Shown here piece by piece: positions 1,963 to 61,229 of a DNA stretch of 64,000 nucleotides. This DNA is from Octopus sinensis. Taxonomy: Eukaryota. The notes under the pieces were generated by a model. The model did not search any database. It saw nothing but the letters and a program-made list of their open reading frames with translations, and was not told the origin of the DNA. Every line of letters begins with the position of its first letter. Position 1 is the first letter of the stretch. The stretch spans positions 124,001 to 188,000 of the forward strand of contig NW_021832374.1 in NCBI RefSeq assembly GCF_006345805.1, in the 5' to 3' direction. The translations under genes were made by a program, and so were the position numbers.

Positions 1963-3613
1963 CAGTAAAACCTCTGGTGCTCGCCACCTCTGTTACTCGC
2001 CACCTCTATTGCTCGCCACATATTTTTCAAAAAATTAAAAATTTCTAGTAAATTTTGATAAATATTCTATTGCTCGCCATTTTCTAAATCTCGCCATTAA
2101 TTTTTAAAAATATTTTTTTTTGTTAAACTATTTTTTATATAAAATATTTCAACCACGCTAAATTTAACATGCGTAAGTGCACAAGATTGTCTTTTACTGA
2201 AAAACGTCGGATTATTGCGTACATGGAGGAGAACAAAAGTCTCACGATGGACCGTATAGCTTACATTTTTTCTTCTGTTTTGAAGAAAAAAATATCTCGA
2301 AGGGCTGTGAACGATTTAAGACTTGGAAAAGAGAAAATAATGTCTACTGATCCTATTTTCTCCAATAAGAAGAGATTATCTAACTTAACTTATTCTGTTA
2401 TTGACACCGAACTATTAACTTGGATGGAATACATTGAGCTTAGAGGGGAGTTTCTGGACGATAATTCAATTTTGTTGAAAGCAAAGAACATTGCTAATAT
2501 TTATGGAATTAAAGAGTTTAAAGCCAGCAATGGATGGCTAAGCAAGTTCAAGATACGGAACAACTTAAAATTGAGGTCTTTATATGGAGAATCAGGATCT
2601 GCTGCAGTTGATCAGAAACAAGAAAAAGATGCATTTACTTCTTTGATCTCTGCAAAGATTCAACAATATAATGCTGAAAACATTTATAAATATTTTTTTT
2701 GGTTAAACTATTTTTTATACGAAAAATTCTTTTAGTTGTGGATCGATGCCCATCCCATAAACTTTACGCTGATTTACAGTCAATTGAAGTTCTTTACCTA
2801 CCTTCGAAGACTACAACAATTCTACAACCAATGGATCAAGGAATCATTAGATCCTTCAAAGGACATTTTAATAAACTTAAATTTGAGTTAATGTTAGAAA
2901 AAATTGAAAATGGAGAAAATCCACTGGAAGCTCATAAAAAATAACCTTAAAAGACGGTCTTCTTTTTACATATTTTGTCTGGAAAAAAGTAACGACCAAA
3001 ACAACTACAAATTGTTTCGGACATTCAAAATGGATCGAATGTGAAAATCAACTCGAAAGACCAACTGTTGAAATTGATAATTATGATCAAATGGTAAATA
3101 TCTTGAAAATATTGGACCCGGTGGATAAAGATGATTTTATTAATCATGAATTTACCGAAATAGATGAAATTGAAGATTACCTTAATATTGCTGGAGATTC
3201 TTTTCCACACAAATATGACGATGAAGATACTCATAATGACGAATCTCATGTGACTTCAGAAGAGGCTTTGAAAATGTTGAAAAGAATAAAGTCATTCTTT
3301 TATCAAAATGAAAATTTTGATATAAATTCGTTGGAACTAATCGAAACCGTTATTAAAAATATGGCTGAATTAAAAAAAATTATTAAAGATTTTTTTAGTT
3401 AATTTTTTCCTTTTAATTTCTTTCGATTCTCTTTGTTTCTTTGCTCAAATATGACTTGAAAGACTCACTTATGATCGGAAAGTATCGAAAACGGAGATGT
3501 TTTCAAAATTTCAATGTCAACAAATTTATTGATTATTTCTATTGCTCGCCAAATTCTATTGCTCGCCATTTTTTCTTCGGTCCCGAAAATGGCGAGCACC
3601 AGAGGTTTTACTG
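1963..3613 (+). mobile_element. pogo/Tigger-family (Tc1-mariner superfamily) DNA transposon, internally deleted
   Basis: Perfect 24-bp TIRs CAGTAAAACCTCTGGTGCTCGCCA with TA on both sides (1961-62, 3614-15). Subterminal CTATTGCTCGCCA repeats. ORFs 2169-2735 (CENP-B-type HTH, FKASNGWLSKFK), 2699-2944 (VVDRCPSH, LQPMDQGIIRSFK) and 3091-3402. The segment holding the first catalytic Asp (YNxDETG) is missing. Confidence 0.95.
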
Positions 3614-4735: not shown

Positions 4736-6212
4736 CACCCCCTCGACATAAATATTGGTGAATCTTCAACTTACTTCATTCATACAAAGAATGATTTAAT
4801 TTTTTCTTCAGATATATTTTAAAATCTGATAAAATTGATAAAAATTAATTTAATTATTTAAATTGAAATTTTGTCTAAGAAATTTGGAAAAAACAACGAC
4901 TTTCATTGGCATAAAATTTGGTTATTGTGAGATTAATATGTAGAATAACCTCCTTTTGCCGAATAGATCTCCCAACATTTTTTTTTCATTGACTCAACTA
5001 ATTTTTCAAGTGTTTTTGATGGAATAGATTCCAAATATCTAATAGATTTTCCTTCAGTGCCTGAATGTTCTCATTTTTCTTTGCCTAATTTGAACCTTCA
5101 TATAAGCCCACAAATGCTCTATCGGATTTAATCCGGAGATTGCGAAGGCCATTCTAATTTTTTAATATTTTTCGCGAAAATATTGAATAATCATTTTTGA
5201 TGTATGGCAGGGAGCGTTGTCTTGTTGAAAAATATAGTCAACAATCCTATTTTTGTACAGAAAATGGCAAAATATTGGTCAAAATAGATTGATATTTGCA
5301 GAATTAAGCGTTTTGTCTATAAATACCAAATCGCCTACCCCATGATAGGAAAAACAACCCACACCATGACTTTCCTAATTTTTTATTACATCATAATTTA
5401 CCTTTTCAAATTTGACAGTTGGAGTAATATTTAGGATTTATTTATTTTAAATTTTTTCTATACACAATTTTTCTTTTTTGGGTAGTGATAATTAAAAAAT
5501 ACATTCATCAGGAAAAATTATTGATCTAAAATAATGGTCTGAAATTTAAAGAAATTTTTTGAATCTGGAAACCATGTGTTTTTTTGTTAGAAGTGGTTTT
5601 TTCTTTGCAATTCTTCCGAAAATTCCATTTTTATTTAAATTTCGTATTATGGTTCGAGACGAGACACGTGTTCCAGAAAACTTTTCTATTTCATTAGAGA
5701 GTTCAGAAGCAGTTAAAGATGAATTTTCCTCTGATGTGCGTACCAAATGATTAATTTGCACATTATTCAAAATTGATAGTCTTCCAGAACCATGTTGGCG
5801 GTCATATGATCCAGTTTTATTGTATTTCTTGATAAATTTACGACTGTTGAATATGGAACACGGTTTCTTTAGAAATTTTAATATATGACATATTTAAGTC
5901 GTATAGCGCAATTATTTTCCCTTTCATAAACGAATCGAGAGTATTATATCTAAAATATTTTTTTATTAAGATCAATCTCTAAATACTAGCATAATTTGAC
6001 GGTTTAAATTTTATAACCAATTTTTATGTCACTAACCTAATTGCCGACATGCTTTAATTTCTTGCAATATTAAAATTTAAATCTATTTTAATTATAAATA
6101 CAAAATAAATATTATTTTAGAAGATCTAAAGGATCTTAAAGTATGAATTTATTCGTTTTTAAATGAAAAAAAGCAGGAAAGATTAAATAACCAAATTTTT
6201 TGTCGAGGGGTG
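4736..6212 (-). mobile_element. Degenerate Tc1-family transposon
   Basis: Imperfect TIRs CACCCC(C)TCGACA flanked by TA (4734-35, 6213-14). Minus strand gives HTH ORF 5546-5770 and frameshifted DD34E motifs VMVWGCFS, YIFQQDNAPCHTS, WPSQSPDLNPIEHLW. Confidence 0.9.
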
Positions 6213-6398
6213 TACTTTCTCAGTCGAATTCTTTGTGTAATTTTAGCATTCTAAAATCATGCCTCCTTTTGATTTTCCAGAAACCCGTTAGAATTTTAAA
6301 ATTATCAAGTTGTAACTCTTCGGCAAATGTAGATCTTCCTTGTCTTTTATAATTGGTGTTGTATTATGAAGAGTGAAAAAATTGTGACCTACAAACAA

Positions 6399-6470
6399 GG
6401 TCCTGTAGTGTAGTGGTTATCACATCGGACTCTGAATCCGGTAACCCGAGTTCGAATCTCGGCAGGACCT
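6399..6470 (+). tRNA. tRNA-Gln (anticodon CTG)
   Basis: 72-nt cloverleaf: acceptor GGTCCTG/CAGGACC, anticodon arm TCGGA-CTCTGAA-TCCGG, T-arm GAGTTCGAATCTC, followed by a T-run Pol III terminator. Confidence 0.97.
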
Positions 6471-6565
6471 TTTTTTGAATTTTTTGTATTTTTTATGGTT
6501 TATTGTCAGATTACAAAAAATATTTAAAACAACATTTACTTGTAATAATAAATTTTTTTTTATTT

Positions 6566-20031: not shown

Positions 20032-20233
20032 TTTCTGAAGAAAATTTGAACTTAATCGTGAACACAAGAAGAAACTTTTATTTTTAATGAAAATAAATTT
20101 TATTAAAACATTTAAACAAAATTTTCATTTAAAACTATTTATTCGGAAATGCGAAAAGAAAATGAACGTGCTGAAAAGTAAATCCGAAATATAGGGTGCC
20201 GGCATTAACAAACGAAAAAATAAATAGTTAACT

Positions 20234-20305
20234 AGCGGAATGGCGCAGTGGGAGCGCGCTGGGCCCATAACCCAGAGGTCCGAGGATCGAAACCTCGTTC
20301 CGCTA
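20234..20305 (+). tRNA. Initiator tRNA-Met (CAT)
   Basis: A1-U72 acceptor AGCGGAA/TTCCGCT, anticodon arm CTGGG-CCCATAA-CCCAG with three G-C pairs, initiator-type T loop GGATCGAAACC, T-run terminator. Confidence 0.97.
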
Positions 20306-20439
20306 TTTTTTAAATTTTTTTATTTACAATCAAATTATGTTTGTTTCTATAGTCGATTCAAATCTTCCTTGACTAAAATTAAAAAAGAATAATTAAAGTA
20401 TTGAAGAACTTGCAATCGTTCTTTAGGATTACAATAAAC

Positions 20440-21288: not shown

Positions 21289-22659
21289 CAGGGGTTCTCA
21301 ACCTTTTTAGCTCAAGGGCCAAATCGATAATTAATATTAGCTTCGCGGGCCGCACAAAAAATATTTTATATATTTTTATATTTTCCAAGCCGGTAACTTG
21401 CTTGCAATCCGAAGTGCAGCCACTGCTGATGCGTAATGAGTTTTTGGACTCTGTTTTTTCTTTTTTTAATTTCCATTTCCTTTATAAAGAATTACAAGCT
21501 AAAAAATCTAAAAAAAGGCGTTGTAACTAAAAAGAAAGTATTATTTGTTTATTAAGTTTTTGAATTCCGAAATAAGTAAAGTCGAAGAAGTTCGTAAAAG
21601 CTGACTCGAGTGATTATCCGTGAGTTTGTTACGATATTTATTTTTTATGCGAATCATTTTACTAAATATTGATTCGCATAAATAGTAGATCCAAACATTG
21701 ATATATTCATATATGCATTGTGTGTTATATTTTTGAATTTGTCTTGAGGAATTAATTCGTAAAAATCAATAATGGACGCTTTTTTGAACAATGCCGCCAG
21801 TTCTATATCATGTTGTAAATTAATGAGTTCTAGTTGAAACTTTGCAGGCGCATCCTTAATTTCCACGCTGAATGGAGTTGTGAATATTTTCATTAAAGGA
21901 AGGAATTCTTTAAAATTCTAAAAATTAAATTTATATAAATGTACCCCAAAACGTGCTTCAAATTGATTAATTAAATCACCAATTATGGATATGTATTTTT
22001 CATAAGCAGCGCCTTCGTTGTTTTCAGATAGTGAATAAAAATGAGATGTATCTCCCTCTTTAAGGGAAGTCATCCATAAATATAATTTTTCGATAAACGA
22101 AGAAATATATCCATATAACTGATAACAGAGTTTGCCTTTTCCTTGTAATTCAACATTGAGATCCGACAAATGCGTGGTTAAATCTACATAAAAAGCCAAA
22201 TCGGCAATCCATCTTTCATCGTAAAGTTCATCGAAAATTACTTTGTCTTTGGTAAACTCCTTAATTTCTGGAAGCAATTTATAGAACCTTTAATAAAATA
22301 TTAAGGCATTTCGAACGACTTAACCACCTCACTTCAGTATGAAAAATAACATCTCCATACTCAGCATCAACTTCTTCCAAAAAAGATTTAAAATATCGGT
22401 GATTGAGCGCTTTTGAGCGTATCCAATTAACGATATAACGACTTTTTTGGAAACATGTTCCATTTTAATGGACTTGGCGATAAGATTTTCCTGGTGAATT
22501 ATGCAGTGATGCCATATTAATTGATCGAAACTATTTTCGGTTATATCTTTGGAACAATCAATAAATAATTAAATTTTAACATTATTAAAAAATTAAAAAA
22601 GTTAGTTACTCTAGAGGGGCCGCAAGAAAAATCCTGCGGGCCGCATTTGAGAACCGCTG
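21289..22659 (-). mobile_element. hAT (Buster/Spin, GTF2IRD2-like) transposon, internally deleted
   Basis: TIRs CAG(G/C)GGTTCTCAA and perfect 8-bp TSD GTATAGAC (21281-88, 22660-67). Minus strand has HCIIHQE, RWLS, DLAFYVDLTTHL and SMFGST remnants. Confidence 0.95.
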
Positions 22660-22801: not shown

Positions 22802-23147
22802 TGTAGCGGAATAATTTTACTGTACTTTTCCATATTCATTTAAAAACCTTTTTCAAATGCATGAGAAGAAATGTTCAGCATTCGGCCTGGAGCTCAGCAG
22901 TCCGCTGGAGGACCTGCATGAGCGGAGTGTTGACACGATAGACGCGATCCTGGCAAAAACTCGAATTCGCTGAGGGAGATAAGACAGTCTCCTGGGGCAA
23001 AACCGAAGTTGAGACCTTCGTGGCTCTCGTTATCAAGCCCCCTAAGCTCTAATTCCTCGGCCACTTTTCTTTTGGAGCTATTGTATTAAATAAACCATAT
23101 TCTATTCTTCTTTGGGTGTCGACTTATCGTGAGACAAAAACTCTACA
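22802..23147 (+). mobile_element. Probable solo LTR
   Basis: 346 bp with TGTAG...CTACA inverted termini, GC-elevated interior, AATAAA at 23089-94, and flanks TTTT/TTGT (3 of 4 match as TSD). Confidence 0.55.
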
Positions 23148-23312: not shown

Positions 23313-24627
23313 ATGATTATTTTCTTTGTTTTGTCTGGTTATTTTTGTAATAAAATTAATAAAAGTATTTCTATTAACCACTGTCAGATTAATACCAGCA
23401 GTAAAAGTGATAGGTATTTTTATATTTATTAATTTCTTTTAGCTCCAGGTAACGACATACATAATTGATTTTTTGTAACATTCTTTTTCATTTAATAACT
23501 ATATATCTGATAAAACTTTTAAATAATTATATTTAGGTGATTTAAATAACGCTGAAACACTCCAATCCGGTAAAATAAACAATTTATTATATTTTAGAAC
23601 AAGCCGCTGATTCCAACGTCGATAAAAATATAAGTTTTTTAATTAATATTGAATTTTAGATCCTCCAGTTGACGAGAATAGTCAAAAAAATGAAGATTCC
23701 TCAAATGATGACGGAAATAATGCTAACAGTCATAGATTGTCAGAATTGTTAAATGGCCAACAAAATGCCGAACCAATGAGTCAGCGTTGGTCTTTATTTT
23801 TGTATTTCTTAGAATCCAACGATAAAGAAGAAAAGGGGGATAATTCAAAAAATTTGGATTCAGAAAGTCTGGGTTGGTCTTTATTTTTATATTTTTAGAT
23901 TCCAACAATAAAGCAGCAGAAAAAAGTGATAATTCAATAAATTCGGATCCGAAGAGTGCGGGTCCATTTTTATTTTTGTATTTTTTAGATTCCATCAATA
24001 AAGGAGAAGAAAAAAATGATAATAAAATAAATTCGGATCCGAAGAGTCAGGGTCCATTTTTATTTTTGTATTTTTTAGATTCCATCAATAAAGGAGAAGA
24101 AAAAATTGATAATTCAATAAATTCGGATCAGAAGAGTGAGGGTCAGTTTGTATTTTTGTATTTTTTAGATTCGAATGATAAAGAAAAAGAAAAAAGTGAT
24201 AATTTAGAAAATTCGGATTTAAAGAGTGGAGGCTGGTCTTTATTTTTTAGATTCCGATAATAAAAATGAAGATAAAATTGATAATTCAAAGAAAGGTATT
24301 TATACAATTATAAAATCATTAAACTCTAAATTATTGAAATATTTTAGTGATCAAAAATCCTGAAACTGTTGGAACTCAAAATGGTTTTTAATATTTTATG
24401 CTTTCTAAATTTTTCACTGAATAATTTTAACTAAAGGCGGTATTTTTGAGAGTAATAGCAGATTCTTTGTGATAATGTTGGTAATTTTGCTAATTCTAAT
24501 CATCTTACTTATTCTCAAACGTCCGATATCGATGGTTTATTTTTTACTTTTATTTTAGAAATTGTCAAATCTTTTCTCTTCTAGAACTAGAGGTCGATAT
24601 ACCGTCCTTGAAGAAAAGGTTGCCTAG
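23313..24627 (+). CDS. Predicted type I membrane protein (~275 aa): signal peptide, Asn/Asp/Ser/Lys-rich exon-repeat ectodomain, TM helix, YxxL tail
   Basis: Removing mostly 24-30 nt GT-AG introns (plus two longer ones, phase 1 except the last) gives MIIFFVLSVFLLTTVRLIPA..., five ~21-aa repeats (e.g. DSNNKAAEKSDNSINSDPKSA), TM FFVIMLVILLILIILLIL and tail KRPISMKLSNLFSSRTRGRYTVLEEKVA*. Confidence 0.75.
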
Positions 24628-24898: not shown

Positions 24899-25506
24899 TG
24901 TCGCAAGCGCAGCGAGCGACCGAGCGCAGCGAGCGACCACTCAATTTCTAGATCCGATCAATCAAAAAATCTATAAATTGACAAATACCTAGGGTTGTAT
25001 TCGGGATTAATATATTCGATAACAAAAATTAAAATCGATGCCAAAGCAGAATGAGCTTTAAAACCGATTTCATAAATAAAAATAATATTTTAAAATTTAT
25101 AATTGATATTTTAGAATAATGAGAAAAAATCTAAATGCTTCATAATTTATTAAAATGTCAAAACAAGAATCTTCTGAAGGAGCACGCCTGTCAGCACAGT
25201 TCATTTTTGATTAGAAGACCTAATTTTAGAGATTAAAACGAAAAAATAACAATGAGATCTGTCAAATTATTACCCCCCCTCACAACCTAAACCAAATTAG
25301 CGTTTAGTATTCATTGATTTTACTTTTTCTATTAAGGTCTACTTATAAATTATTTTATGGGATTCAATGGAAAACTTAAGTTATTTCAATTTTAATTTTA
25401 AATCATGTTAAAATTTTAAATAATTTAATAAATATATTTGTTGATGATAGGCTTGTTAGCTGTCAAAGTCGCGTCTAGCGCTCGGTCGCGCGCTGCGCTC
25501 GCGACA
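24899..25506. mobile_element. 608-bp non-autonomous TIR element (MITE-like, superfamily unassigned)
   Basis: 29-bp TIRs TGTCGC(A/G)AGCGCAGCG(A/C)GCGACCGAGCGC with TATTA on both sides. The paralogous site in unit 2 (27197-27201) is empty. Confidence 0.9.
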
Positions 25507-25638: not shown

Positions 25639-26929
25639 TGAAACACTCCAATCCGGTAAAATAAACAATTTATTATATTTTAGAACAAGCCGCTGATTCC
25701 AACATCGATAAAAATATAAGTTTTTTAATTAATATTGAATTTTAGATCCTCCAGTTGACGAGAATAGTCAAAAAAATGAAGACGGAAATTTCAAAGAAGA
25801 ATGTAGTGAAGATATTTTATTTTCTTTAAGATTCTTCAAATGATGACGGAAATAATGCTAACAGTCATAGATTGTCAGATTTGTTAAATGGCCGACAACA
25901 AAATGCCGAACCAATGAGTCAGCGTTGGTCTTTATTTTTGTATTTCTTAGAATCCAACGATAAAGAAGAAAAGGGGGATAATTCAAAAAATTTGGATTCA
26001 GAAAGTCTGGGTCCATCTTTATTTTTATATTTTTAGATTCCAACAATAAAGCAGCAGAAAAAAGTGATAATTCAATAAATTCGGATCCGAAGAGTGAGGG
26101 TCCATTTTTATTTTTGTATTCTTTAGATCCAACAATAAAGAAGAAAGGGGATATTCAAAAAATTGGATCAGAAAGTCTGGGTCAATTTTATATTTTGTAT
26201 TTTTTAGATTCCAACAATAAAGGAGAAAAAAGTGATAATTCAATAAATTCGGATCCGAAGAGTGCGGGTCCATTTTTATTTTTGTATTCTTTAGATTCCA
26301 ACAATAAAGCAGAAGAAATGGGGGATAATTCAAAAAATTCGGATCCGAAGAGTCAGGGTCAATTTGTATTTTTGTAATTTATAGATTTTAACGATAAAGG
26401 AGAAGAAAAAAATGATAATAAAATAAATTCGGATCCGAAGAGTCAGGGTCAATTTTTATTTTTGTATTTTTTAGATTCGAATGATAAAGAAAAAGAAAAA
26501 AGTGATAATTTAGAAAATTCGGATTTAAAGAGTGGGGGCTGGTCTTTATTTTTTAGATTCCGATAATAAAAATGAAGATAAAATTGATAATTCAAAGAAA
26601 GGTATTTATACAATTATAAACTCATTAAACTCTAAATTATTGGAATATTTTAGTGATCAAAAATCCTGGAACTGTTGGAACTCAAAATGGTTTTTAATAT
26701 TTTGTTTTCTAAATTTTCACTGAATAATTTTAATTAAAGGCGGTGTTTTTGAGAGTAATAGCAGATTCTTTGTGATAATGTTGGTAATTTTGGTAATTCT
26801 AATCATCTTACTTATTCTCAAACGTCCGATATCGATGGTTTATTTTTTATTTTATTTTAGAAATTGTCAAATCTTTTCTCTTCTAGAACTAGAGGTCGAT
26901 ATACCGTCCTTGAAGAAAAGGTTGCTTAG
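25639..26929 (+). CDS. 5'-less duplicate of the repeat membrane-protein gene (seven repeat exons, TM and tail in frame)
   Basis: Starts mid-exon, with no signal-peptide exons. All following splice sites and the overall frame are retained down to RYTVLEEKVA* (TAG 26927-29). Confidence 0.6.
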
Positions 26930-27356
26930 ACATTAGTTGTTTTAATGTTGTTTTTCTCTTATGGTGTTAGAATTAAAATTTTCGGTTATAACTTTAATAC
27001 TCAGTTTATGTAAAATTTATTTATATAATTTGAACAAGAAGTTGATTAAAATGTCGTTTTAAGATCAATTTTTTAGATAAAGTAACGCGGCATGTTATTT
27101 TTTTAATATTTATTTTGAAACACTGTTTGTTATCATACAAAGATCTTATTTTTCTACGAATCATGAATAAACATAAAATAGACTTAGTCTTATTTATATT
27201 ATTATTTGTGACTTTTCACAAATTAATTTTAGCTTCAAACTGATTATCTTTTTTTATTATTAAAGACAAATACAAATATACGGTTATCTTGTTTATAACT
27301 ATCAACTTGTAAAATTTATAATAAAAGTATTAGTAGTAAAAATTAACGAAGATTAA

Positions 27357-29876: not shown

Positions 29877-31542
<1,666 letters not shown>

Positions 31543-32791: not shown

Positions 32792-35758
32792 ATGTTGTTC
32801 TTGATTTTGGCAAGTCTAATATACAACAAAGTAATTTATATATATAAATACTTTTTTTTATTACTTAGAACTCTGAAATATCACTTCCTGACCAACTTTT
32901 ACTTATAAACACAATTGATGGACGACTTACTGCAGTAGATAAAAATACTGGACTAATCAAATGGACAATTCAAGACGGTAACATATGTTATATATATATT
33001 AACAGAACCAACAATAATAATTGAACAATTTGACTTAAAAATGTATATATTAAATAAAATAATTTTAGGAATACATTTTTTCCAAACCCACGTGATGGGT
33101 CTCTTTATTCAAGTCATGGCAAAGGGGTTAGAAAGTTGACTGCAAGTATTCCTACTTTGGCCATATCCCCGCCTACTATAACGAATGATAGACTTATATA
33201 TTCAGGTCAGTATATATATGTTATATATAGGATATAAAAAGGACTCGTGGGTTGATGTGGATCTCCAAAATGGGCAGGTTTTTGCAGAGGCTGACTCGGA
33301 TATTTGTGCTAAACACAACTCCATTTTTGGTGCCCACGTACAAATAGCAAAAATAAGTTTATAATTTATTTAATTATTTAAATATTAATTAATTAATTTA
33401 AAATAGAATATAGTGTAACAATAACAGATCGAGATACATTTAATTGCAAGTTGTATTTATGATTATTTTTCAGATCGAATATTACTTATAATCAATTTTT
33501 TGCTTCTGGGTCTGTTTCTGTGGAAAATTATGGTCATTTTTTGTCTTAATTTAAAGGTTTGAGACACTTTTCCTCCACTTTTGGAGGCATTCTGGCCACA
33601 TTAGATGCAGAGAATGGCAATTTGTTGTGGCTTCAGCATTTTGACTCTCCAATTGTAAGTATTTTTATTGTGGAGGACTCTGTATTGCTCACTGTGCCCT
33701 TCGTTACACTCGATGAGGCCACTTTTGACACAATTTTTAGCTCAAGTGGTGCTAAATTTAACCAATTTTTTGATATTTATCATCAGAATTATCAGTTTGT
33801 GTGTTTTTGTTGTATTTTTGTAGACCAATGGTTCATATTAGTAGAACTGAGACTGGATACTACTGTCTTCCCATCTGGATTGACCAAAAAGTGACCCCGT
33901 CTATTTCTGTATTCAATTTAGTCATGTGTATTAGAAGTTGCCACGGTTGACTTATTCTGAATTGATGGGCAAACAAAATGGATTGATTGTGGAGTATGTC
34001 ACATTCACAGTTTATGATGATATGTTCAGTTTATATATTTATTTTCATTTTTAGTGCCAAAAAGTCAAAATTATGAATATTTCCAGCCAAATAAGAATCA
34101 ATCTCACTCTCCTGTGAAGACTGTGGGACATGATTCATATTTGATTGTAATATTTGTGTCAATTTTGGCAACTTTGATCATTTTCTACCACATTTTTAAA
34201 GTATTGGTTATAAAATGGAAATATTATAGAAAAGTGAGCCAAAAAAAGAGATTCAAGAAATGTCGCACAATTCACACATCTCACGAGAGTCAGTTCTTGA
34301 AGTGGATGGAATTGTAAAAGTGGGCAAACTGAGTTACAATCCAGCCCACGTGATTGGGAGAGGGTGTGACGGGACTGTCGTATTTAAGTATATATATAAG
34401 TCAATATATATTCTCAGAGGTAATTTCGACCGTCGGGTTGTTGCTATCAAACGTCTAATGGCTCATAATTATGTCCTGGCAGAAAGGGAAATAAATCTGC
34501 TTATTGACTGTGATGTCCATCCGAATGTGTGCAGATATTATTTTATGGTAGTTAAATACTATTTTTTTGATTCCCGCGCTTTTTGGATTATTTTATTGTA
34601 GGAAAGTACATCGGAATTTTTGTATATTGCATTGGAGTATTGTATGGGGACTTTGCATGATTTTGTTGAAAAAAATATACAAGATGTGGATTTGAGCGGG
34701 AAAGAGTGTCTAAGACAAGCCTCATTGGGACTCGAACATCTCCATTCTCTCAAAATTGGTAGAAAAAATGGATAATTGTCAGTACATAGAGATATCAAAC
34801 CACAAAACATACTTATAACTTTTTCTGATAAAAACAAACGAGCAAAAGCAGTCATTTCTGATTTTGGGTTATGCCGATCAGTTGAAAGTGACCAAATGTC
34901 ATTTTCCCGCCACTCGGGGAATGTGGGGACCGAAGGTTGGATGGCTCCAGAAATGATCAAGTTGAATGTCGATCGGATAGTAAGCACTCTAATAGCACGT
35001 TAGTCATCCTCAGTGGACATATTCTCTCTGGGATGTGTGTTTTATTACGTGCTTTCCCACGGGCATCATCCTTTCGGGGAGTCCCTCAACCGACAGGCTC
35101 ACATTCAGGAAAATATTTTGATTTTACATCATTTGGATGCTGAACGTGATTGGATTTTGATATTTTTAGATGACCATGTGGCCAGGACACTCATTATGAG
35201 AATGTTGAGTCATGACCCTTCGAAGAGACCGAGTTGTGGAAGTGTGATGAATCAGCCTTTCTTTTGGGACTCTGCAAAAATATTGTCATTTTTTTTGGTG
35301 TATTTTTTGGTGAATTATTGTGAAAGGACACGAGTGATCGGATTGATAAACTTGATATTTCGGACGAGCTTGTACGTCGTTTGGAAAGTAATAATAAAAG
35401 TGTCATTAATTTGAGTTGGATTGACCATATTTGTGTTGCTTTAAAATCAGGTTGGATTTTGTTGACGGAATTGTAGATTTGGGGAGATTTCGTACTTATA
35501 AGGGACGATATGTGAGAGATCTGCTCAGGGCAATTCGGAATAAGGTTGGTTTAGTTTGTTATTTCGGTGTAGAAGAATCATTACGCTGAAATGCCGGATG
35601 ATGTGAAAAGGTCTTTGGGGGAAATTCCAGATGAATTTGTAAAATATTTTACCAACAGATTTCCTTACCTGCTTGTTTTTGTGTATGAGGCAATGAAAGT
35701 CTGTGCTGAAGAGCCCAATTTTCGTAAATACTACTCTGTTGATAAATCATTTTTATGA
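32792..35758 (+). CDS. ERN1: ER stress sensor kinase/endoribonuclease IRE1 (multi-exon)
   Basis: Signal peptide, lumenal LPDQLLLINTIDGRLTAVDKNTGLIKW, TM YLIVIFVSILATLIIFY, kinase IGRGCDGTVVF / VHRDIKPQNILI / SDFGLCR / GTEGWMAPE, and KEN RNase VRDLLRAIRNK..NHYAEMP...FTNRFPYLL. Confidence 0.95.
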
Positions 35759-36855: not shown

Positions 36856-38052
36856 CAGAGGTTTCCAAATGGGGAGGCGCGCCTCCCTAGGGAGGCGTTG
36901 ACTCGTGTCAAGGGAGGCGCGAAAAGTATTTCAGAAACATTTTTTAGAAAATTATATCTATGTAAAAAACGTGACTATATTCCGATAATAAGAGTTATTA
37001 ATTTAAAAATTATATTTTTTCAAAAATTTATTTAATTTATTAGACAATTAAATAATTTTAACACATGAATAAATTCTTGAGTGGTTGCAAAAGAAAATTC
37101 ACGAATAATAAAGATTTTGACGATGGTTCAAAAAATCAAAATGATTGGAATATAATCAATACCACTGATTAGAAGGGTGTTTGAACTCAAAGATCAAGTT
37201 GCAGATTTTCTTGATGAAAATGATATTGAAGATGCAAAGTTGTTCAGGGATGATGACTTTATTGTCAAATTTGCCTATTTAGTTGACATTTTTGGGAAAT
37301 TGAGTATATTGAATAAATCAATGCAGGGACCACAACTACATTTATTCTCTCAAAAGGACAAAATAAAAGCATTTATGAAAAAATTGGTATTATGGAAATC
37401 AAATATACAAAAAAATATCTATGACATGTTTCCACTTTTAAACACCTTTTGCGCCATAGTGAACATTGAAGCAAACAAAGACATATTTGCTGAACATTTG
37501 GATTGTTTGTTGAAGCATTTTGCTCACTATTTTAAAGATCTCGACTGTAAAATGTTCGAATGGATACAGAATCCATTTATTGATGAAGAAGATAATCAAT
37601 TTGCATTGACAACTTTTGAAAAAGAAAAATTGATAGAATTGTCATGCGATACATTATTGAAACAAAAATTTGAGAGAGAACCGCTAATTTCTTTTTGGTT
37701 GAATGTAAGAACGGAATATGAAATTTTGTCGAATAAAGCAATGAAAGTTTTGTTGCCATTTGCTACTTCATATTTATGCGAAACTGGATTTTCTGCACTA
37801 GCTGCAATTAAATCTAAATATCGAACTCGTTTAGTAGTGACTAATGAGCTAAGAGTAGCACTCTCTGCGATGACACCAAGATTTGAAAAACTTTGCGCCA
37901 AGATGGAAAAAAAATTATCTCATTAACTTTTTGTTTTAAAAAATTGTTTTTGATAAAATAATAATTGTATTATATTATGGAATATAAAGGGAGGCGCAAG
38001 ATTGTACTTTTTCTCTAAGGGAGGCGCGTAAAAAAAAGCTTGGAAACCTCTG
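36856..38052 (+). mobile_element. hAT (Buster/ZBED5-like) transposon, internally deleted
   Basis: Perfect 13-bp TIRs CAGAGGTTTCCAA and 8-bp TSD GTCTAGAA (36848-55, 38053-60). 249-aa C-terminal ORF 37177-37926 with AYLVDIF and dimerisation motif LPFATSYLCETGFS. Confidence 0.96.
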
Positions 38053-42224: not shown

Positions 42225-45200
42225 TGAATGAATGAATGAATGAATTTTTATTAACGGAAAAGCCAAAAAAGAGGGAGAAAGTTAATGAACAACGTATGCC
42301 TCTTCTTCGTTGTTTCCCTCTTTTTTTTTTTTTTTTTAATATTTAATTCGAGAGGAAAAGGCTCTCTCAAGAACACTTCCAACCGTTTCCGTCGCGTCTT
42401 CCATCACTTGAGGGATGGGTTGGTCCAACTGGAGTCCATTTGCCAATTTGATGGCATATCGCCTCGTCTTTTCGAGCTTAGCGATAATGCCATCCCTTTC
42501 AGCAGTAGGATACCATCCCTCGAACCGTAGGTAAGCAATGGTTCGACGCACGTTTTATAAACATATAAAAACGTTTCCGGGGAAAGGTGGAAGTGAATTA
42601 TGCTCCTGAGAATTTGAGCGCATTTCCTTCTCCTCGAGTCGATGTATCTGAAGTAAGAACCCTTGGATCCAACTTCAACCCCAAGGTATTTCAGGTTCTC
42701 CGTTACTGTAAACCCATAGAGGTTTCTCGGCGGTTTTCGTTTTGCTCCCTGTTTTGCAATCCAAGTGGCGGTGCACTTTTCTTTTGCAAGCGTCAGTCCT
42801 TTTGATATGCACCATTCTTCCACTCTTGTCACGTATCCTTTTAACTTCCTCCACGAGATGTCTTTTCTCCACGAAGCATCCGTTATTAATATGTCGTCCG
42901 CGTAGATCATGAGACGACTGGTAGGATCTTTCGGTTTTGGAATATCAGCAACGTAAATATTAAAAAGCAGGGGGCTCAAGACCGAGCCTTGAGGTACCCC
43001 TCTTTTGAGATCGACAGATTCCGACAAACGGTTTCCGCATCGTATGTATGACCTTCTCATTGATAAATAGCTCTTCAGCCAATTGACCGTTTTAGACCCG
43101 GGTTTGCTCTTGGCGACACTTTCCAAGAGGCCCAGGTGCCATACGCTGTCAAAAGCTTTTGAGACATCGAGGCAGATAGCAATAGTCGCTGTATTATTAG
43201 CAAGACTAAGCGAGATGACTTTCTCGAGTTCTCCGAAACAATCACCACAGGATCTTTTTCGTCGGAATCCCCACTGCTCTACTGCAAGTGCACCTGATTC
43301 CTCTACGAAGTTCGAAAGTCTTGTGAAGACAATCCGTTCCATAATTTTAGAGACGGAGCATATTAGGCTTATCGGCCTATAGTTCTCTGCATGGTCCTTT
43401 ATTTTTCCAGGCTTTGGAATCATACGTACGATTGACTTTTTCCAAGAGTCCGGTACGTATCCAAGTCTCCAGCTTGCATTGTATAGTGCGGTCAGTATCG
43501 TAGGATAATATTTGGAGCATGTTTGAATACAGAAATTGGAATGTAGTCATGGCCGGGTGCATTATTCTTGCAGCTCATAATTGCGGCATACGTTTCTTCC
43601 AACGTTATGTCTCTGCACAGTGGTCCCGTATGACTCAAATTAGCTCTTAGACTTCTCTGAGCCTCACATATAACTTCTTTCGGAACCATGTCGATCGGAT
43701 CCACCTCTTGAACTTTTGCCAGTTGACTTCGCAGATGTGAGGGAACTTCATCGAGCGGGATATCTATTCCTTCAGTTGTTTTTAGTCGGATCTCTTCTCC
43801 TTTGTTCTCCATATTACTCAGTCTGTTGAAAACCTTCCAAAAATGAGGGTTTTTCTTATTCAGTTTCGAGCATTGACTCTTCCAAGCAAGGTCTGAATGT
43901 TTTTTTGCGACATCATTTATCTCTATTTTCACGGTACGAATCTTATCCCGAAGACGAATACGATCTATGGGGTCACTGCATCGTCTTAGCTTCTTTTCAA
44001 GGTTTCCCTTCCATTTTATAAGTTTTCCCAAAGATTCGTCAATCCGGGTTTTTCTGTTAGTATTTGACATGATGTATTTCCTGATTGAAGATTTTCGGAG
44101 AAAGTCCAGTATAGCTTCTCTGAGAATTTTATCAGTTTTTCAATTTGTATATTCGAAGGGATGTTTTGTATTGGATACGGTGTCAAATGCTTTTTCATTG
44201 ATACCTCAAGGTCCGACCAGATTGTCCGAGACGTATCGTATCCGATAAACAGATCTTCGCATATCGTAGATGATGTTCGCATACACAAGGATTGAGGTAG
44301 GTGATCACTACCAATGTTTATCTCAATCCTTGGTATGCTGCATTGATGAACAAGATCTGCCGATACGAGGAAAACTCCAATACAATCCTCTCCATAACAA
44401 GAGAAGTGGTTTGGTTCTCGTGAGGTCAAAACACTAAAACCGCAGTTCTCCGATAATCTGAGGAGTATATTACCGTCCGAATTTGTGTTGGCACATCCGT
44501 ACGATGTGTGTTTTGCGTTAAGGTCTCCTATTAGAATTCCTCTATCATTGTTCTGGAAAAATTCTTCAATAAGATTTTGATAATTCTTCATTGCTTTGGA
44601 GTACATAGCTCCGACAGATATCCATCCAAGGGATGTTAGTAGTTTCAATGTAATCAGTTCGCACAAATTTTGTTCGACGATTTTCAAGTCCTCACCATCA
44701 GATTGTCTTTATAATATATGGATGTCCCAGTGCCAGCCACTGCGTCAGGTCGCCATGGGATATCAATCGACTGAAAACCATGGATTTTATGATGCTGATT
44801 TCCCTTAAGCTTCGTTTCATAACAACCAATATGTCCATGTTTACCGAGCTAACCAAGTAGGTTAGCTCCGTAGCCCGTTTCCGAATGACCGGGCGTTGAT
44901 AAGCGTAAAAACGCTCATCTCGTCAAGTTTTGGTGACTGTCCTCCATAACGAGCGCCACCAGTTCCAGTAAATTTTTAAACGTTTTTTTAGTCGTCGTTT
45001 TCGATTTAAGATGGAGGTCCTCCAGTTTTGCTTTTAAATGTTCATTGCATTTGTCTTTCATCTGCCACCTGTATGTTGCATGGTGGTGTCCCGGGTTTGA
45101 TTTGGAAGTGTCCCCGAGTTCATGCCTTTTTTGGGTTGAGTCATATATTCGGGTGTGTTTACGCCTTGTTCCAACTTTAATTTTGGTTTTTGCGTAGATA

Positions 45201-55636: not shown

Positions 55637-56978
55637 TTAAAAAGACCGTATTGACCCTAAAATTCTCAAAATAAAATTACCAATGCTGACAACATCAACC
55701 AAGTCCTGATCACTGTAATTAGCATATCCGTCATTAACATAGAAAAGTTCATTAATGGAATTTGCTTCCTGCATACTCACCATCAAATTTTCATATTCAT
55801 CTAGAGACCGACAAATAAAACCCTTTGATAAATAAAAACAATAAAATAATACAAAACAAAAAGTAGGCCGTATTTTACTAAAAGACGTTGCTTCGAGGTT
55901 ATGAGTATGATAGGAAGAGTCGACATTTTTATCAAAATTATCGCAGATTGCGTCGTTCACTTTATGGGGATCATAGTACATCAGTTTATCGTCATAAAAT
56001 CCAGTCAAAAAAACCGCATGATCTGGAGGTAGGCCACTCAAAGCTCCAATAAATTGTGGAATTTGCAATATTTTCTAAAAATATAAAACAACTCAAACTT
56101 TTAAAGTAGAAATATATTGAGATTCCAAATATTGTGAAAGATTTTGAACGGAAACCAAAAGAATTGCGGGTTTCCATCCGCCATCACTCGAAAGGCAAGC
56201 ATTGACTATATTTGCTAATAAAAAGTTAACTAATTTCCTGTTTAATGATCGAAACATCCCATGAAAGTATTTTAAAATCGTGGAAAGAACTCGCAATTTT
56301 TCTATTTCTAAATTAATCGAAAATTACTCTGAGATCTTTGCGACTGAAGAAGCTCCAAATTTATGACCATATTTTATACCGCACGTGCTCAGACCTGTCC
56401 AAGCTTAAAATTATAATTATCGACTGTCTACAGAAATTTTGAATGGAAAATAAGCTTTGCGGGCGATCAATAAACATGGATAAAATTTCTAAATAAACCT
56501 CATTAGTTTCCGAATCCTGCCATTTATAATCTATCAATTATCTCAAAATTCTGAGTAATACCACCAATGCGTATATTTAGAATTCCGTTGGCGACAAGCA
56601 TTTGAGCACATCGAATCATACAACCCCAACCAGCATCAGAATTGAGCTTATTTTCTATTTTTTGTTTTAAATTAAAACAATACCCTCGTCAATTGCTGAA
56701 AATCCAGTTCTGTATGTCATGTATATTTTTGAGAAAATATCTTGTTTGAGTTCTTCTATGTCTGGAAATAAATTTTGTTCTAACATTATACCTTTTGGAA
56801 CGTAGTATTTCTTTCCATAAAACCAACAATCGGAAGTGACGTTGGCTTTGTTGAGCATTTTTCGAATGTAGTACCAAACTAGAACATATACAAATATATC
56901 TACAATTTCTAATGCTGTTCACTTTACAGGCTTTTGCCTAAAATAAAATATAACAATAACCACAAAAATATTTATCAT
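55637..56978 (-). CDS. ATG4: Cysteine protease ATG4 (multi-exon)
   Basis: IYMTYRTGF, NSDAGWGCMIRCAQM (catalytic Cys), WKPAILL, LMYYDPH (catalytic Asp/His), GFICRSLDEY. Start codon tentative. Confidence 0.9.
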
Positions 56979-60545: not shown

Positions 60546-60880
60546 GAATTTTTAGAAAATAACAAAAAAATAAAAATAACAAATAAAAATAAATAATTTA
60601 AAAACAAAAAAATAAAAAAAACTTTAAAAATTTGTAAAATAGTATAAACAAAAAAATCTCTGCCGCCACGGCAACAACCTGTCTAATTTTTTTAACAGCC
60701 AATTAAGATAATGCTTAGAGCCTTTATAGTCCGGAGATTTAGCTTAGTGACCTTGATTAGACAAACCACTAGCGGAAATGGGGCAGGCGGAGATGCGGCA
60801 GGCAGAGTAGCAGCAGCCAAAAAGCGACACACAAAAAAGATTTAATTAATTACCTTAAGCTGACCGTTTTTTCTTCAGCT

Positions 60881-61229
60881 TCGTTTTTCCTCCTTCAGTT
60901 ATCTATTTAAAAAATTATTTTTGAATAATAAAAAATATTAGGAAAAAAGAGGCATACAGAAAATAAATTCTATCTTTACGAAAAACTTCTTTTCTTAAGG
61001 TCGTCTTCCCTCCTTCGGTTATCTATTGAAAAAAATTATTTTTGAATAATAAAAAATATTAGGAAAAAAGAGGCATACAGAAAATAAATTCTATCTTTAC
61101 GAAAAACTTCTTTTCTTAAGGTCGTCTTCCCTCCTTCGGTTATCTATTGAAAAAAATTATTTTTGAATAATAAAAAAGTTTAGGAAAAGAGGCATACCGA
61201 AAATAAATTTTATCTTTACGAAAAACTTA
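60881..61229. repeat. 120-121-bp tandem repeat, about 2.9 copies
   Basis: TCCTTC(A/G)GTTATCTATT recurs at 60891, 61011 and 61132 with near-identical spacers. Confidence 0.95.

What the first reader, a model, noticed from the sequence alone, without database searches (positions are those of the whole stretch)
23313..24627. Membrane protein whose ectodomain is a tandem array of exon-plus-mini-intron units
Seen: the ~87-90 bp repeat is a 60-63 nt exon plus a 26-27 nt GT-AG intron, all phase 1, so any exon can be skipped, duplicated or swapped in frame. Most introns are 27 nt and stop-free, so retention would insert a hydrophobic nonapeptide (GPFLFLYFL) between hydrophilic repeats. A 6-nt microexon (CTCCAG) is also predicted. 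The spliced product has a signal peptide, N/D/S/K-rich repeats with N-x-S sequons, one TM helix and an R-rich YTVL tail. Known: YxxL is an endocytic/TGN sorting motif, and TGN38/TGOLN2-type proteins have this architecture. Inference: a splice-tunable, length-variable surface or Golgi glycoprotein, and a live case of intron multiplication by tandem duplication.
Basis: partly seen in the sequence, partly recalled or inferred. Interest (0 to 1): 0.8.

Follow-up and report, generated by a model that had tools for sequence, protein, structure and literature searches.

The report
Repeat membrane gene with mini-introns
The repeat really is a chain of small exons, each followed by a roughly 27-base intron, in a predicted membrane-protein gene; such tiny introns are normal here because this stretch of the octopus assembly most likely comes from a dicyemid kidney parasite.

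Summary
Removing 13 GT-AG introns (24-88 nt) from 23313-24627 gives one 282-codon ORF. It has an N-terminal hydrophobic stretch, an acidic N/S/D/K/E-rich repeat region, one TM helix and a basic tail with YTVL. The ~90-bp tandem unit is a 57-63 nt exon plus a 25-27 nt intron, and the first 12 introns are phase 1.

A partial tandem duplicate 2.3 kb downstream splices the same way into an intact 289-codon frame. It has 7 full units against 5. All 23 internal exons of the two copies are multiples of 3; only 12 of 27 introns are.

The mini-introns are not special to this gene. IRE1 and ATG3 in the same window have 15 introns with a median of 28 nt.

The assembly is Octopus sinensis. The octopus's own IRE1 and ATG3 lie on chromosome scaffolds with kb-scale introns, so this unplaced contig is most likely dicyemid DNA.

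- The repeats carry no N-x-S/T sequons.
- The last intron is phase 0.
- An in-frame alternative donor lies 6 nt upstream in every unit.
- The 6-nt microexon is unverified.
- No homology to TGN38, FAM174 or anything else was found.

The architecture is a known kind (SmPoMuc, Flag silk, MEG-like) in miniature. Expression and splicing remain untested.

The parts
23313..23406 (+). Exon 1: ATG plus an N-terminal hydrophobic stretch (MIIFFVLSGYFC...), a probable short signal peptide. It holds the only two N-x-S/T sequons.
   Evidence: An in-frame stop lies just upstream (ORF list).
23407..23442 (+). Intron 1 (36 nt, GTG...TAG, phase 1). The internal GTA donor at 23414 would be out of frame.
23443..23448 (+). 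Predicted 6-nt microexon CTCCAG. It is unverified, and skipping it (a 130-nt intron) is also in frame.
   Evidence: The region is absent from paralog B.
23537..23785 (+). Exons 3-5 (33, 36 and 126 nt) with 28- and 26-nt phase-1 introns. This is the non-repeat polar part of the ectodomain. The end of exon 5 is a degenerate repeat unit.
23786..24250 (+). Tandem array: the 27-nt intron after exon 5, then five units. Exons are 60, 63, 63, 63 and 57 nt; introns are 26, 27, 27, 27 and 25 nt. All are phase 1. In the last unit the usual donor is GC, and a GT 6 nt upstream keeps the frame.
24251..24383 (+). Exon 11 (45 nt, a truncated repeat unit), a 52-nt intron, and exon 12 (36 nt).
24437..24534 (+). 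Exon 13 (98 nt): the TM helix FFVIMLVILLILIILLIL (aa 237-254), followed by KRPISM.
   Evidence: KD19 peak 3.45
24559..24627 (+). Exon 14, after a 24-nt phase-0 intron: a basic cytoplasmic tail with YTVL (YxxPhi), then the TAG stop.
24900..25505 (.). A ~606-bp element with ~39-nt inverted ends and a 7-bp flanking duplication. It was inserted between copies A and B after the duplication.
25639..26929 (+). Copy B, a partial tandem duplicate beginning in mid-exon 3 of A (A 23553). It has 14 GT-AG introns of 23-52 nt and a 289-codon open frame, with 7 full units plus one truncated. It has one extra 24-nt exon segment plus a 28-nt intron. No ATG or signal-peptide exon was found.

Best explanation
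This is a protein-coding gene of a dicyemid-like parasite. Its contig was co-assembled with the Octopus sinensis genome.

The gene encodes a single-pass type I membrane protein. It has a short N-terminal signal-like segment and a ~200-residue acidic, probably disordered N/S/D/K/E-rich ectodomain (pI 4.4). One TM helix and a 28-residue basic tail carrying a YxxPhi motif (YTVL) follow.

The ectodomain is built from 19-21-codon modules. Each module is one phase-1/phase-1 exon followed by a ~27-nt intron of the size class normal for this genome.

The ~90-bp exon+intron module has been multiplied and reshuffled by unequal recombination or slippage. Because every module is symmetric, gain, loss or hybrid formation keeps the frame and changes intron number at the same time.

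Repeat amino-acid sequence is weakly constrained or diversifying. Frame, composition and splice sites are kept.

Shown: the anatomy, the 3n rule, the paralog comparison, the local intron norm and the host identity. Inferred: transcription and splicing, topology, surface or endocytic-recycling localisation, and dicyemid origin.
For: Gene model:
- The 282-aa ORF appears only after removing 13 GT-AG introns. The unspliced frames break at the 26- and 25-nt introns, and the longest read-through ORF is 138 aa with no start and no TM.
- Internal exons are 3n in 11/11 (A) and 12/12 (B) cases. Introns are 3n in 6/13 and 6/14 cases.
- Copy B splices into an intact 289-codon frame. Its exon-length differences from A (+3, +24, -3, -6) are all 3n. 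A 52-nt insertion resolves into 24 nt of exon plus a new 28-nt GT-AG intron. Intron indels are 3 and 1 nt.
- Outside the repeats, A and B differ at 7/484 exon sites, 9/231 intron sites and 5/268 flank sites.
- GT, TAG and two internal A's are invariant across the unit introns.

Local intron norm:
- IRE1 has introns of 30, 54, 24, 24, 24 and 29 nt.
- ATG3 has introns of 27, 30, 24, 28, 47, 29, 28, 26 and 25 nt. All were placed by protein conservation.

Protein features: KD hydropathy gives a TM at aa 237-254. The ectodomain has D+E 47 against K+R 26.

Origin of the contig:
- A PLK4 ORF on scaffold C16 is identical to XP_029646527.1 [Octopus sinensis].
- A second IRE1 lies on C22, spread over about 12 kb. 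A second ATG3 lies on C19, with exons more than 22 kb apart.
- A LINE family from the window has 40 further matches, most of them >=98% identical. All are on unplaced contigs and none on the chromosome-scale scaffolds.
- Among animals, introns under 30 bp are known only in myxobolids and Dicyema (PMC13644364). The dicyemid median intron is 27 bp (PMC6543705). D. japonicum was collected from O. sinensis, and its genome is 49% repeats with LINEs (PMC6736024).
Against: - There is no transcript evidence. No identical or similar protein exists in the 5.8-billion-protein collection. The same is true of this contig's ATG3 and IRE1 (best hits 38% and 52% identity), so that absence is uninformative.
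- A spliced ORF of this length arises in about 1% of shuffles under a permissive mini-intron rule.
- The 5' end is the weakest part. It has a short hydrophobic N-terminus, a 36-nt GTG intron competing with an out-of-frame 29-nt GTA one, a 6-nt microexon and an atypically long 88-nt intron.
- Unit donors begin GTC, which is not seen among the 15 reference introns.
- Repeat pN/pS is about 2 on very few sites. Amino-acid constraint therefore cannot be used as evidence of function.
- Copy B lacks a start and may be a pseudogene, so its open frame is weak evidence (roughly a 1-in-27 chance).
- One B unit carries six 1-nt homopolymer deletions, which could be long-read consensus errors.
Confidence: 0.7

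Rival explanations
1. The locus is a decaying or never-functional gene: a lineage-specific ORF or pseudogene in a transposon-rich region. The array is then simply a ~90-bp minisatellite that still carries old splice sites, and nothing is made from it today.
For: - It is an orphan: no homolog and no domain.
- Repeat pN/pS is at least 1.
- The neighbouring copy B is 5'-truncated.
- Transposon remnants flank the locus.
- The ORF alone is p~0.01.
Against: - Copy A keeps a start, 13 usable splice-site pairs, the frame, the TM and the stop.
- All exon-length changes are 3n, while intron changes are not.
- Exons differ less than introns between A and B, 1.4% against 3.9%.
Confidence: 0.17
2. The 27-nt segments are not introns. 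The array is translated straight through as a repeat protein, with hydrophobic GPFLFLYFL blocks between the polar blocks.
For: Four A-copy segments and most B-copy segments are 27 nt and free of stops in frame. This gives read-through ORFs of 138 and 131 aa.
Against: - The 26- and 25-nt segments and a TAA in one B unit break the read-through frame. It cannot be joined to the start codon or to the TM exon.
- Every segment starts GT and ends TAG.
- The segments are T-rich (54% T) against A-rich exons, like the verified IRE1 and ATG3 introns.
Confidence: 0.04
3. The gene is real, but the repeat structure seen here is partly an assembly artefact. Unit number, unit order and single-base indels would come from collapsed or mis-polished long reads of a low-coverage contaminant.
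For: - One B unit has six 1-nt deletions, all in homopolymer runs.
- The contig is an unplaced by-product of a host assembly.
- Near-duplicate unplaced contigs exist.
Against: - IRE1, ATG3 and copy A all give clean frames across 37 introns.
- Copies A and B were assembled separately with consistent flanks.
Confidence: 0.09

Closest known systems
Schistosoma mansoni polymorphic mucins (SmPoMuc), and the spider flagelliform silk gene discussed in the same paper (PMC2576457)
   Same: - Protein repeats are encoded by genomic tandem repeats, each holding one small exon plus its intron.
- Repeat number differs between clustered gene copies.
- Truncated copies lie next to complete ones.
- Hybrid units indicate recombination.
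- Introns of the units are at least as homogeneous as the exons.
- It is a parasite gene, possibly at the host interface.
   Different: - The unit here is ~90 bp (57-63 nt exon plus 25-27 nt intron), against ~1 kb in SmPoMuc (27-bp exon).
- There is no sequence similarity.
- This product is predicted to be membrane-anchored and N/D/K/E/S-rich, not a secreted S/T/P mucin.
- Only one complete gene and one fragment were found, not a multigene family.
Schistosome micro-exon genes (MEGs) (PMC10526429, PMC4350168)
   Same: - Most of the coding sequence is in short symmetric exons whose lengths are multiples of three. Any of them can be dropped or added in frame.
- The gene is lineage-specific and fast-evolving.
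- There is an N-terminal signal-like segment.
   Different: - MEG exons (3-81 bp) are separated by long introns of up to 5 kb. Here the introns are 24-88 nt.
- MEG products are secreted. This one has a TM helix and a cytoplasmic tail.
- There is no homology.
- Splice variation is documented for MEGs and untested here.
TGN38/TGOLN2, and endolyn/CD164-type sialomucins
   Same: As recalled from the literature, these share the overall layout: signal peptide, repetitive polar ectodomain, one TM helix and a short tail with a YxxPhi sorting motif.
   Different: - There is no detectable sequence relationship.
- The repeats lack N-glycosylation sequons and are poor in Thr and Pro.
- Localisation is unknown.
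- The resemblance is architectural only.
Ordinary dicyemid genes with ultra-short introns (PMC6543705, PMC6736024, PMC13644364)
   Same: Intron length (median 27-28 nt), AT-rich introns with weak splice motifs, and a repeat- and LINE-rich genomic setting.
   Different: Here the introns are paralogous copies of one another inside a tandem array. I found no report of that for dicyemids in the papers I read.

Membership tests
TGN38/TGOLN2-type or FAM174/C5orf15 (DUF1180) proteins | Detectable sequence or profile similarity to the family | tested here: not met
   Pfam-A has no family at E<=0.01. At E<=10 there are only unrelated sub-threshold hits. PDB has none at E<=1. The 5.8-billion-protein search has none.
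TGN38/TGOLN2-type or FAM174/C5orf15 (DUF1180) proteins | Type I topology with a YxxPhi motif in a short cytoplasmic tail | tested here: inconclusive
   Hydropathy gives one TM at aa 237-254, followed by KR. YTVL lies 19 residues after the TM. The signal peptide and the topology were not run through a dedicated predictor.
TGN38/TGOLN2-type or FAM174/C5orf15 (DUF1180) proteins | TGN/endosome cycling | not testable with these tools
   This needs localisation experiments.
Schistosome micro-exon genes (MEG) | Bulk of the CDS in short symmetric exons (3-81 bp, multiples of 3) | tested here: met
   10 of 14 exons are 6-63 nt and 3n, and all 11 internal exons before the TM exon are 3n.
Schistosome micro-exon genes (MEG) | Long introns between the micro-exons, and a secreted (non-membrane) product | tested here: not met
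   Introns are 24-88 nt. A TM helix is predicted.
Schistosome micro-exon genes (MEG) | Protein variation by alternative splicing of micro-exons | not testable with these tools
   No transcript data are available.
Genes whose protein repeats are tandem exon+intron genomic units (SmPoMuc / Flag-silk type architecture) | Each tandem genomic unit contains a whole exon and a whole intron, and the unit introns are homologous | tested here: met
   Alignment of 14 units from A and B. Two introns are 100% identical, and mean intron divergence among the seven 60-63-nt (beta-type) units is 0.088.
Genes whose protein repeats are tandem exon+intron genomic units (SmPoMuc / Flag-silk type architecture) | Unit number varies between gene copies or individuals | tested here: met
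   5 full units in A against 7 in B, although the non-repeat parts are ~98% identical. B contains hybrid units. Variation between individuals was not testable.
Genes whose protein repeats are tandem exon+intron genomic units (SmPoMuc / Flag-silk type architecture) | Homology to SmPoMuc or silk genes | tested here: not met
   No hits. The resemblance is architectural, not familial.
Dicyemid (Dicyemida) nuclear gene | Spliceosomal introns mostly under 30 nt in conserved genes | tested here: met
   The 15 IRE1 and ATG3 introns have a median of 28 nt, against a reported median of 27 bp (PMC6543705).
Dicyemid (Dicyemida) nuclear gene | Comes from a cephalopod host sample but is distinct from the host genome | tested here: met
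   The host is O. sinensis. The host has its own IRE1 and ATG3 on chromosome scaffolds. The LINE family is confined to unplaced contigs.
Dicyemid (Dicyemida) nuclear gene | Direct sequence match to a Dicyema reference genome or transcriptome | not testable with these tools
   No dicyemid sequences surfaced in the searchable collections. The best ATG3 hit is 38% identical.

The most novel reading that the evidence does not exclude
The array is a variable surface-coat gene of a dicyemid at the parasite-host (renal sac) interface. It would diversify in two ways. One is rapid gain, loss and recombination of ~90-bp exon+intron modules, with diversifying selection on the repeat residues. The other is regulated retention of the 27-nt, stop-free, in-frame introns, which would escape nonsense-mediated decay and insert hydrophobic nonapeptides between the polar modules. 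The mini-introns would then act as optional coding cassettes.
Probability: 0.1. Interest if true: 0.75.

Novelty: new variant of a known kind. Interest (0 to 1): 0.45.

Why it matters
The locus shows introns being multiplied, lost and newly delimited by tandem duplication on a very short time scale. Two copies about 2% apart differ by two modules and by one extra exon-intron pair. The smallest intron class known in animals is involved, so the whole exon+intron module is only ~90 bp.

That makes it a convenient natural test case for three questions:
- How are intron-defined ultra-short introns recognised?
- How do symmetric phase-1 exons allow length variation?
- Are in-frame, stop-free mini-introns retained?

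The by-product matters for users of the data. The Octopus sinensis reference assembly appears to carry long contigs (hundreds of kb) of a dicyemid genome. They are a contamination issue for cephalopod genomics, and a free long-read resource for a phylum that is hard to assemble.

Tried and rejected
- Exon 1 donor at 23414 (GTA, 29-nt intron): out of frame, with stops throughout.
- An extra intron inside exon 1 (GTTATT...AAAAG, 28 nt): gives the wrong phase. Rejected by inspection.
- Upstream ATGs at 22919 and 23215 run straight into stops.
- A start for copy B: there is no ATG between the inserted element and the first homologous exon. ATGs inside the element were not pursued.
- Homolog search with the spliced protein: none. 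Own-genome DNA and protein searches found only copies A and B.
- Pfam at E<=10 and PDB: nothing meaningful.
For the same reason I did not attempt structure prediction.
- Taxon identification by protein identity failed. IRE1 is at most 52% and ATG3 at most 38% identical to anything.
- The literature look-up of the assembly size found nothing. Host identity came from an exact PLK4 match instead.
- The spliced-ORF shuffle test is only weakly discriminating, because mini-intron rules are permissive.
- TRF over 258 kb of the contig found no other exon-intron-like array, only satellites.
- Rfam and tRNA scans found nothing in the locus.
- A ciliate (Chromidina) or apicomplexan (Aggregata) origin was considered and rejected. 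IRE1 is closest to metazoan IRE1s, the standard stop codons are used, and LINE, hAT and mariner elements are present.

Full report
**What is in the sequence**

Tandem Repeats Finder reports a 90-bp period at 23778-24247 (5.3 copies, 83% matches) and a second array at 25931-26524 (6.8 copies).

Reading the + strand from the ATG at 23313 and removing 13 GT...AG segments gives one open frame of 282 codons ending at TAG 24625-24627. The exons are:
- 23313-23406
- 23443-23448
- 23537-23569
- 23598-23633
- 23660-23785
- 23813-23872
- 23899-23961
- 23989-24051
- 24079-24141
- 24169-24225
- 24251-24295
- 24348-24383
- 24437-24534
- 24559-24627

The introns are 36, 88, 28, 26, 27, 26, 27, 27, 27, 25, 52, 53 and 24 nt. 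Introns 1-12 are phase 1 and the last is phase 0.

The unspliced sequence gives at most a 138-aa frame (23844-24260), with no start and no membrane segment. The 26- and 25-nt segments shift that frame.

**Is it more than chance?**

A long ORF obtained by splicing is only modest evidence in AT-rich DNA when introns may be as short as 23 nt. I ran a dynamic-programming search allowing up to 13 GT-AG introns of 23-90 nt and exons of at least 6 nt. In it, 31 of 3000 dinucleotide shuffles reach 849 coding nt, with mean 585 and SD 142.

Three other kinds of evidence carry more weight.

- Exon lengths. All 11 internal exons before the TM exon are multiples of three, while only 6 of 13 introns are.
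- The neighbouring copy B (25639-26929). It splices in the same way, with 14 GT-AG introns of 23-52 nt, into an unbroken 289-codon frame. All 12 of its internal exons are 3n, against 6 of 14 introns. Between A and B the exon-length changes are +3, +24, -3 and -6, and the intron changes are 3 and 1 nt. A 52-nt insertion in B resolves exactly into 24 nt of exon plus a new 28-nt GT...AAG intron of phase 1. Outside the repeats, A and B differ at 7/484 exon sites, 9/231 intron sites and 5/268 flank sites.
- The unit alignment. GT, the terminal TAG and two internal A's are invariant, while other intron positions vary. In the last full unit, where the usual donor has become GC, a GT 6 nt upstream keeps the frame.

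**Mini-introns are the rule here, not a peculiarity of this gene**

Two conserved genes in the same window fix their intron positions by protein conservation.
- IRE1 (about 32.8-35.8 kb, + strand) has kinase-domain introns of 30, 54, 24, 24, 24 and 29 nt.
- ATG3 (28.5-27.36 kb, - strand) has introns of 27, 30, 24, 28, 47, 29, 28, 26 and 25 nt and gives a clean 296-aa product.

The median of these 15 introns is 28 nt. They are AT-rich and end in TAG, AAG or CAG. The introns of the finding (median 27 nt, 54% T) fit this class.

One difference remains. Many unit introns begin GTC, which none of the 15 reference introns does.

**Whose genome is this?**

The assembly (2,719,151,902 bp in 13,516 contigs) has scaffolds of 30-213 Mb.

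The window lies on a 382-kb unplaced contig, C8845. The assembly holds a second copy of each conserved gene:
- A second IRE1 on C22, with exons spread over about 12 kb and 45-52% identity to the window's IRE1.
- A second ATG3 on C19, with exons more than 22 kb apart.

A LINE from the window (42404-44708) has 40 further matches, most of them at least 98% identical. All are on unplaced contigs and none on the chromosome-scale scaffolds.

The window's IRE1 is closest to metazoan IRE1s but at most 52% identical. Its ATG3 is at most 38% identical to anything. This is a very fast-evolving animal with no relatives in the collections.

Among animals, introns under 30 bp are reported only for myxobolid myxozoans and Dicyema (PMC13644364). 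The dicyemid median intron is 27 bp (PMC6543705). Dicyemids live in cephalopod renal sacs, and D. japonicum was collected from O. sinensis. Its genome is 49% repeats with many LINEs (PMC6736024).

The contig is therefore most likely dicyemid DNA co-assembled with its host. This is an inference, at about 0.9. I could not make a direct match to a Dicyema reference.

**The protein**

The product reads:

MIIFFVLSGYFC...(polar region)...FFVIMLVILLILIILLIL-KRPISMKLSNLFSSRTRGRYTVLEEKVA

Its features:
- Kyte-Doolittle analysis gives a single strong TM at residues 237-254.
- The N-terminus has an 11-residue hydrophobic stretch, which is short for a signal peptide.
- The 207-residue region between them is N 18%, S 15%, D 13%, K 12% and E 10%, with pI 4.4 and few hydrophobic residues. 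It is probably disordered.
- The 28-residue tail is basic, with YTVL 19 residues after the membrane.
- Only two N-x-S/T sequons exist (residues 16 and 27), and none is in the repeats.

No Pfam family, PDB chain or database protein matches. The TGN38/FAM174 idea is therefore an architectural analogy only.

**Evolution of the array**

Copy A has five full units and copy B has seven, plus a truncated last unit in each. B contains a second alpha/beta pair and hybrid units such as DSNNKAEEMGDNSKNSDPKSQ, so recombination within and between units has occurred.

B is a partial tandem duplicate. Homology starts in mid-exon 3 of A (23553 = 25639). It includes the 3' flank and a 134-nt segment that recurs at 27196-27331 with 97.8% identity. 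A ~606-bp element with inverted ends and a 7-bp flanking duplication later inserted between the copies. B has no start codon or signal exon and may be a pseudogene.

Among the seven 60-63-nt (beta-type) units, divergence by position is:

| Position | Divergence |
|---|---|
| Codon position 1 | 0.078 |
| Codon position 2 | 0.209 |
| Codon position 3 | 0.041 |
| Intron | 0.088 |

Pooled pN/pS over the six 63-nt units is 2.15, but it rests on only about 17 variable sites. The residues are thus unconstrained or diversifying, while frame and splice signals are kept.

The unit introns are copies of one another, and two are identical.

**Points of uncertainty in the model**

- The 5' end. Only the GTG donor at 23407 (36-nt intron) is in frame, and the GTA donor at 23414 is not.
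- The 6-nt microexon. It has good flanking sites (TTTTAG|CTCCAG|GTAACG), but skipping it is also in frame, and copy B lacks the region.
- The donor choice in the units. Every unit has a second in-frame GT 6 nt upstream, so the partition could be 57+33 rather than 63+27.
- One B unit differs from its relatives by six single-base deletions in homopolymers. These may be consensus errors.
- No other array of this kind occurs in the 258 kb of the contig I could read.

**How it probably works**

This section is inference.

The gene makes a surface or endocytically cycling single-pass membrane protein with a flexible acidic ectodomain. Dicyemid peripheral cells take up nutrients from host urine by endocytosis (PMC6736024), so a YxxPhi-tailed coat protein is plausible there.

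Each ~27-nt intron would be recognised as a unit (intron definition). The natural alternative event is then retention, which for the 27-nt stop-free introns would add a hydrophobic nonapeptide in frame. Exon skipping is less natural under that mode.

Length variation arises at the DNA level, by unequal exchange of symmetric modules.

**Comparison with what is known**

Tandem genomic units of one small exon plus its intron that encode protein repeats are known from SmPoMuc mucins of Schistosoma mansoni. Those have a 27-bp exon in ~1-kb units, up to about 20 copies, and truncated copies nearby. They are also known from spider flagelliform silk (PMC2576457). Genes built from short symmetric exons are known as schistosome MEGs (PMC10526429).

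This locus is the same kind of thing in miniature, with no sequence relationship to those genes. Its product is predicted to be membrane-anchored rather than secreted.

**Verdict**

The thing is a new variant of a known architecture in a poorly known phylum, and its expression is still unproven.

Noticed in passing
Whole window (G000:C8845:124001-188000); G000 C16, C19, C22: The assembly is Octopus sinensis (exact PLK4 match). This 382-kb unplaced contig carries its own IRE1 and ATG3 with 24-30-nt introns, while the host copies sit on chromosome scaffolds with kb-scale introns. The contig looks like dicyemid parasite DNA inside the host reference assembly.
   Followed up: yes
window 42404-44708 (- strand): A LINE-type element (endonuclease and reverse-transcriptase ORFs) has 40 further matches, most at least 98% identical. 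All are on unplaced contigs and none on scaffolds C1-C30. This looks like a young, probably active family of the non-octopus genome, and it marks which unplaced contigs belong to that genome.
   Followed up: partly
window 25639-27331: A partial tandem duplicate (copy B) of the finding's gene starts in mid-exon 3, with no start codon. Its frame is otherwise intact. It has two more repeat units and one extra 24-nt exon piece plus a 28-nt intron relative to copy A.
   Followed up: yes
window 24900-25505: A ~606-bp element with ~39-nt inverted ends (90% complementary) and a 7-bp flanking duplication lies between the two gene copies. It is absent from the equivalent site after copy B, so it looks like a MITE-like DNA transposon insertion.
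   Followed up: partly
window 28505-28476 (- strand): ATG3 appears to have a 27-nt intron immediately after its ATG start codon (ATG|GTTTGC...CAAAG|TTTGAA). No in-frame ATG exists in the next exon.
   Followed up: partly
window 26127-26180: One repeat exon of copy B differs from its closest relatives by six single-base deletions, all in homopolymer runs. They net to -6 nt and shift the frame locally twice. This is either real decay or long-read consensus error.
   Followed up: no
window 34388-35338: Two IRE1 kinase-domain introns (30 nt at about 34388, 24 nt at about 35146) are multiples of three and stop-free in frame. In-frame retainable mini-introns therefore also occur in a housekeeping gene.
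   Followed up: partly
window 21654-22568 (-), 37156-37926 (+), 2127-3402 (+), 5546-5893 (-): The gene neighbourhood is dense with transposon remnants. These are hAT-like transposase fragments (Pfam Dimer_Tnp_hAT is just sub-threshold for 37156-37926) and Tc1/mariner- or pogo-like ORFs.
   Followed up: no
G000 unplaced contigs C8692/C9547, C10363/C12596, C9300/C10550, C10621/C11714: Pairs of unplaced contigs give identical kinase hits. This suggests haplotigs or several parasite genotypes in the assembly. The finding's locus has no such twin.
   Followed up: no
window 6398-6471 and 20233-20306 (+): tRNA-Gln(CTG) and tRNA-Met(CAT) genes. Nothing from Rfam falls in the finding's region.
   Followed up: no
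window 55637-56074 (-), 30200-31000 (-): Exons of an ATG4-like cysteine protease and of a MAPK-like kinase. These identifications are by eye from the translation and were not checked with a family search.
   Followed up: no
contig C8845 33111-34958, 36230-37400, 77743-78176 (contig coordinates); window 60869-61228: Non-coding satellites with periods of 87-95 bp and 121 bp. None has the exon/intron structure of the finding.
   Followed up: partly
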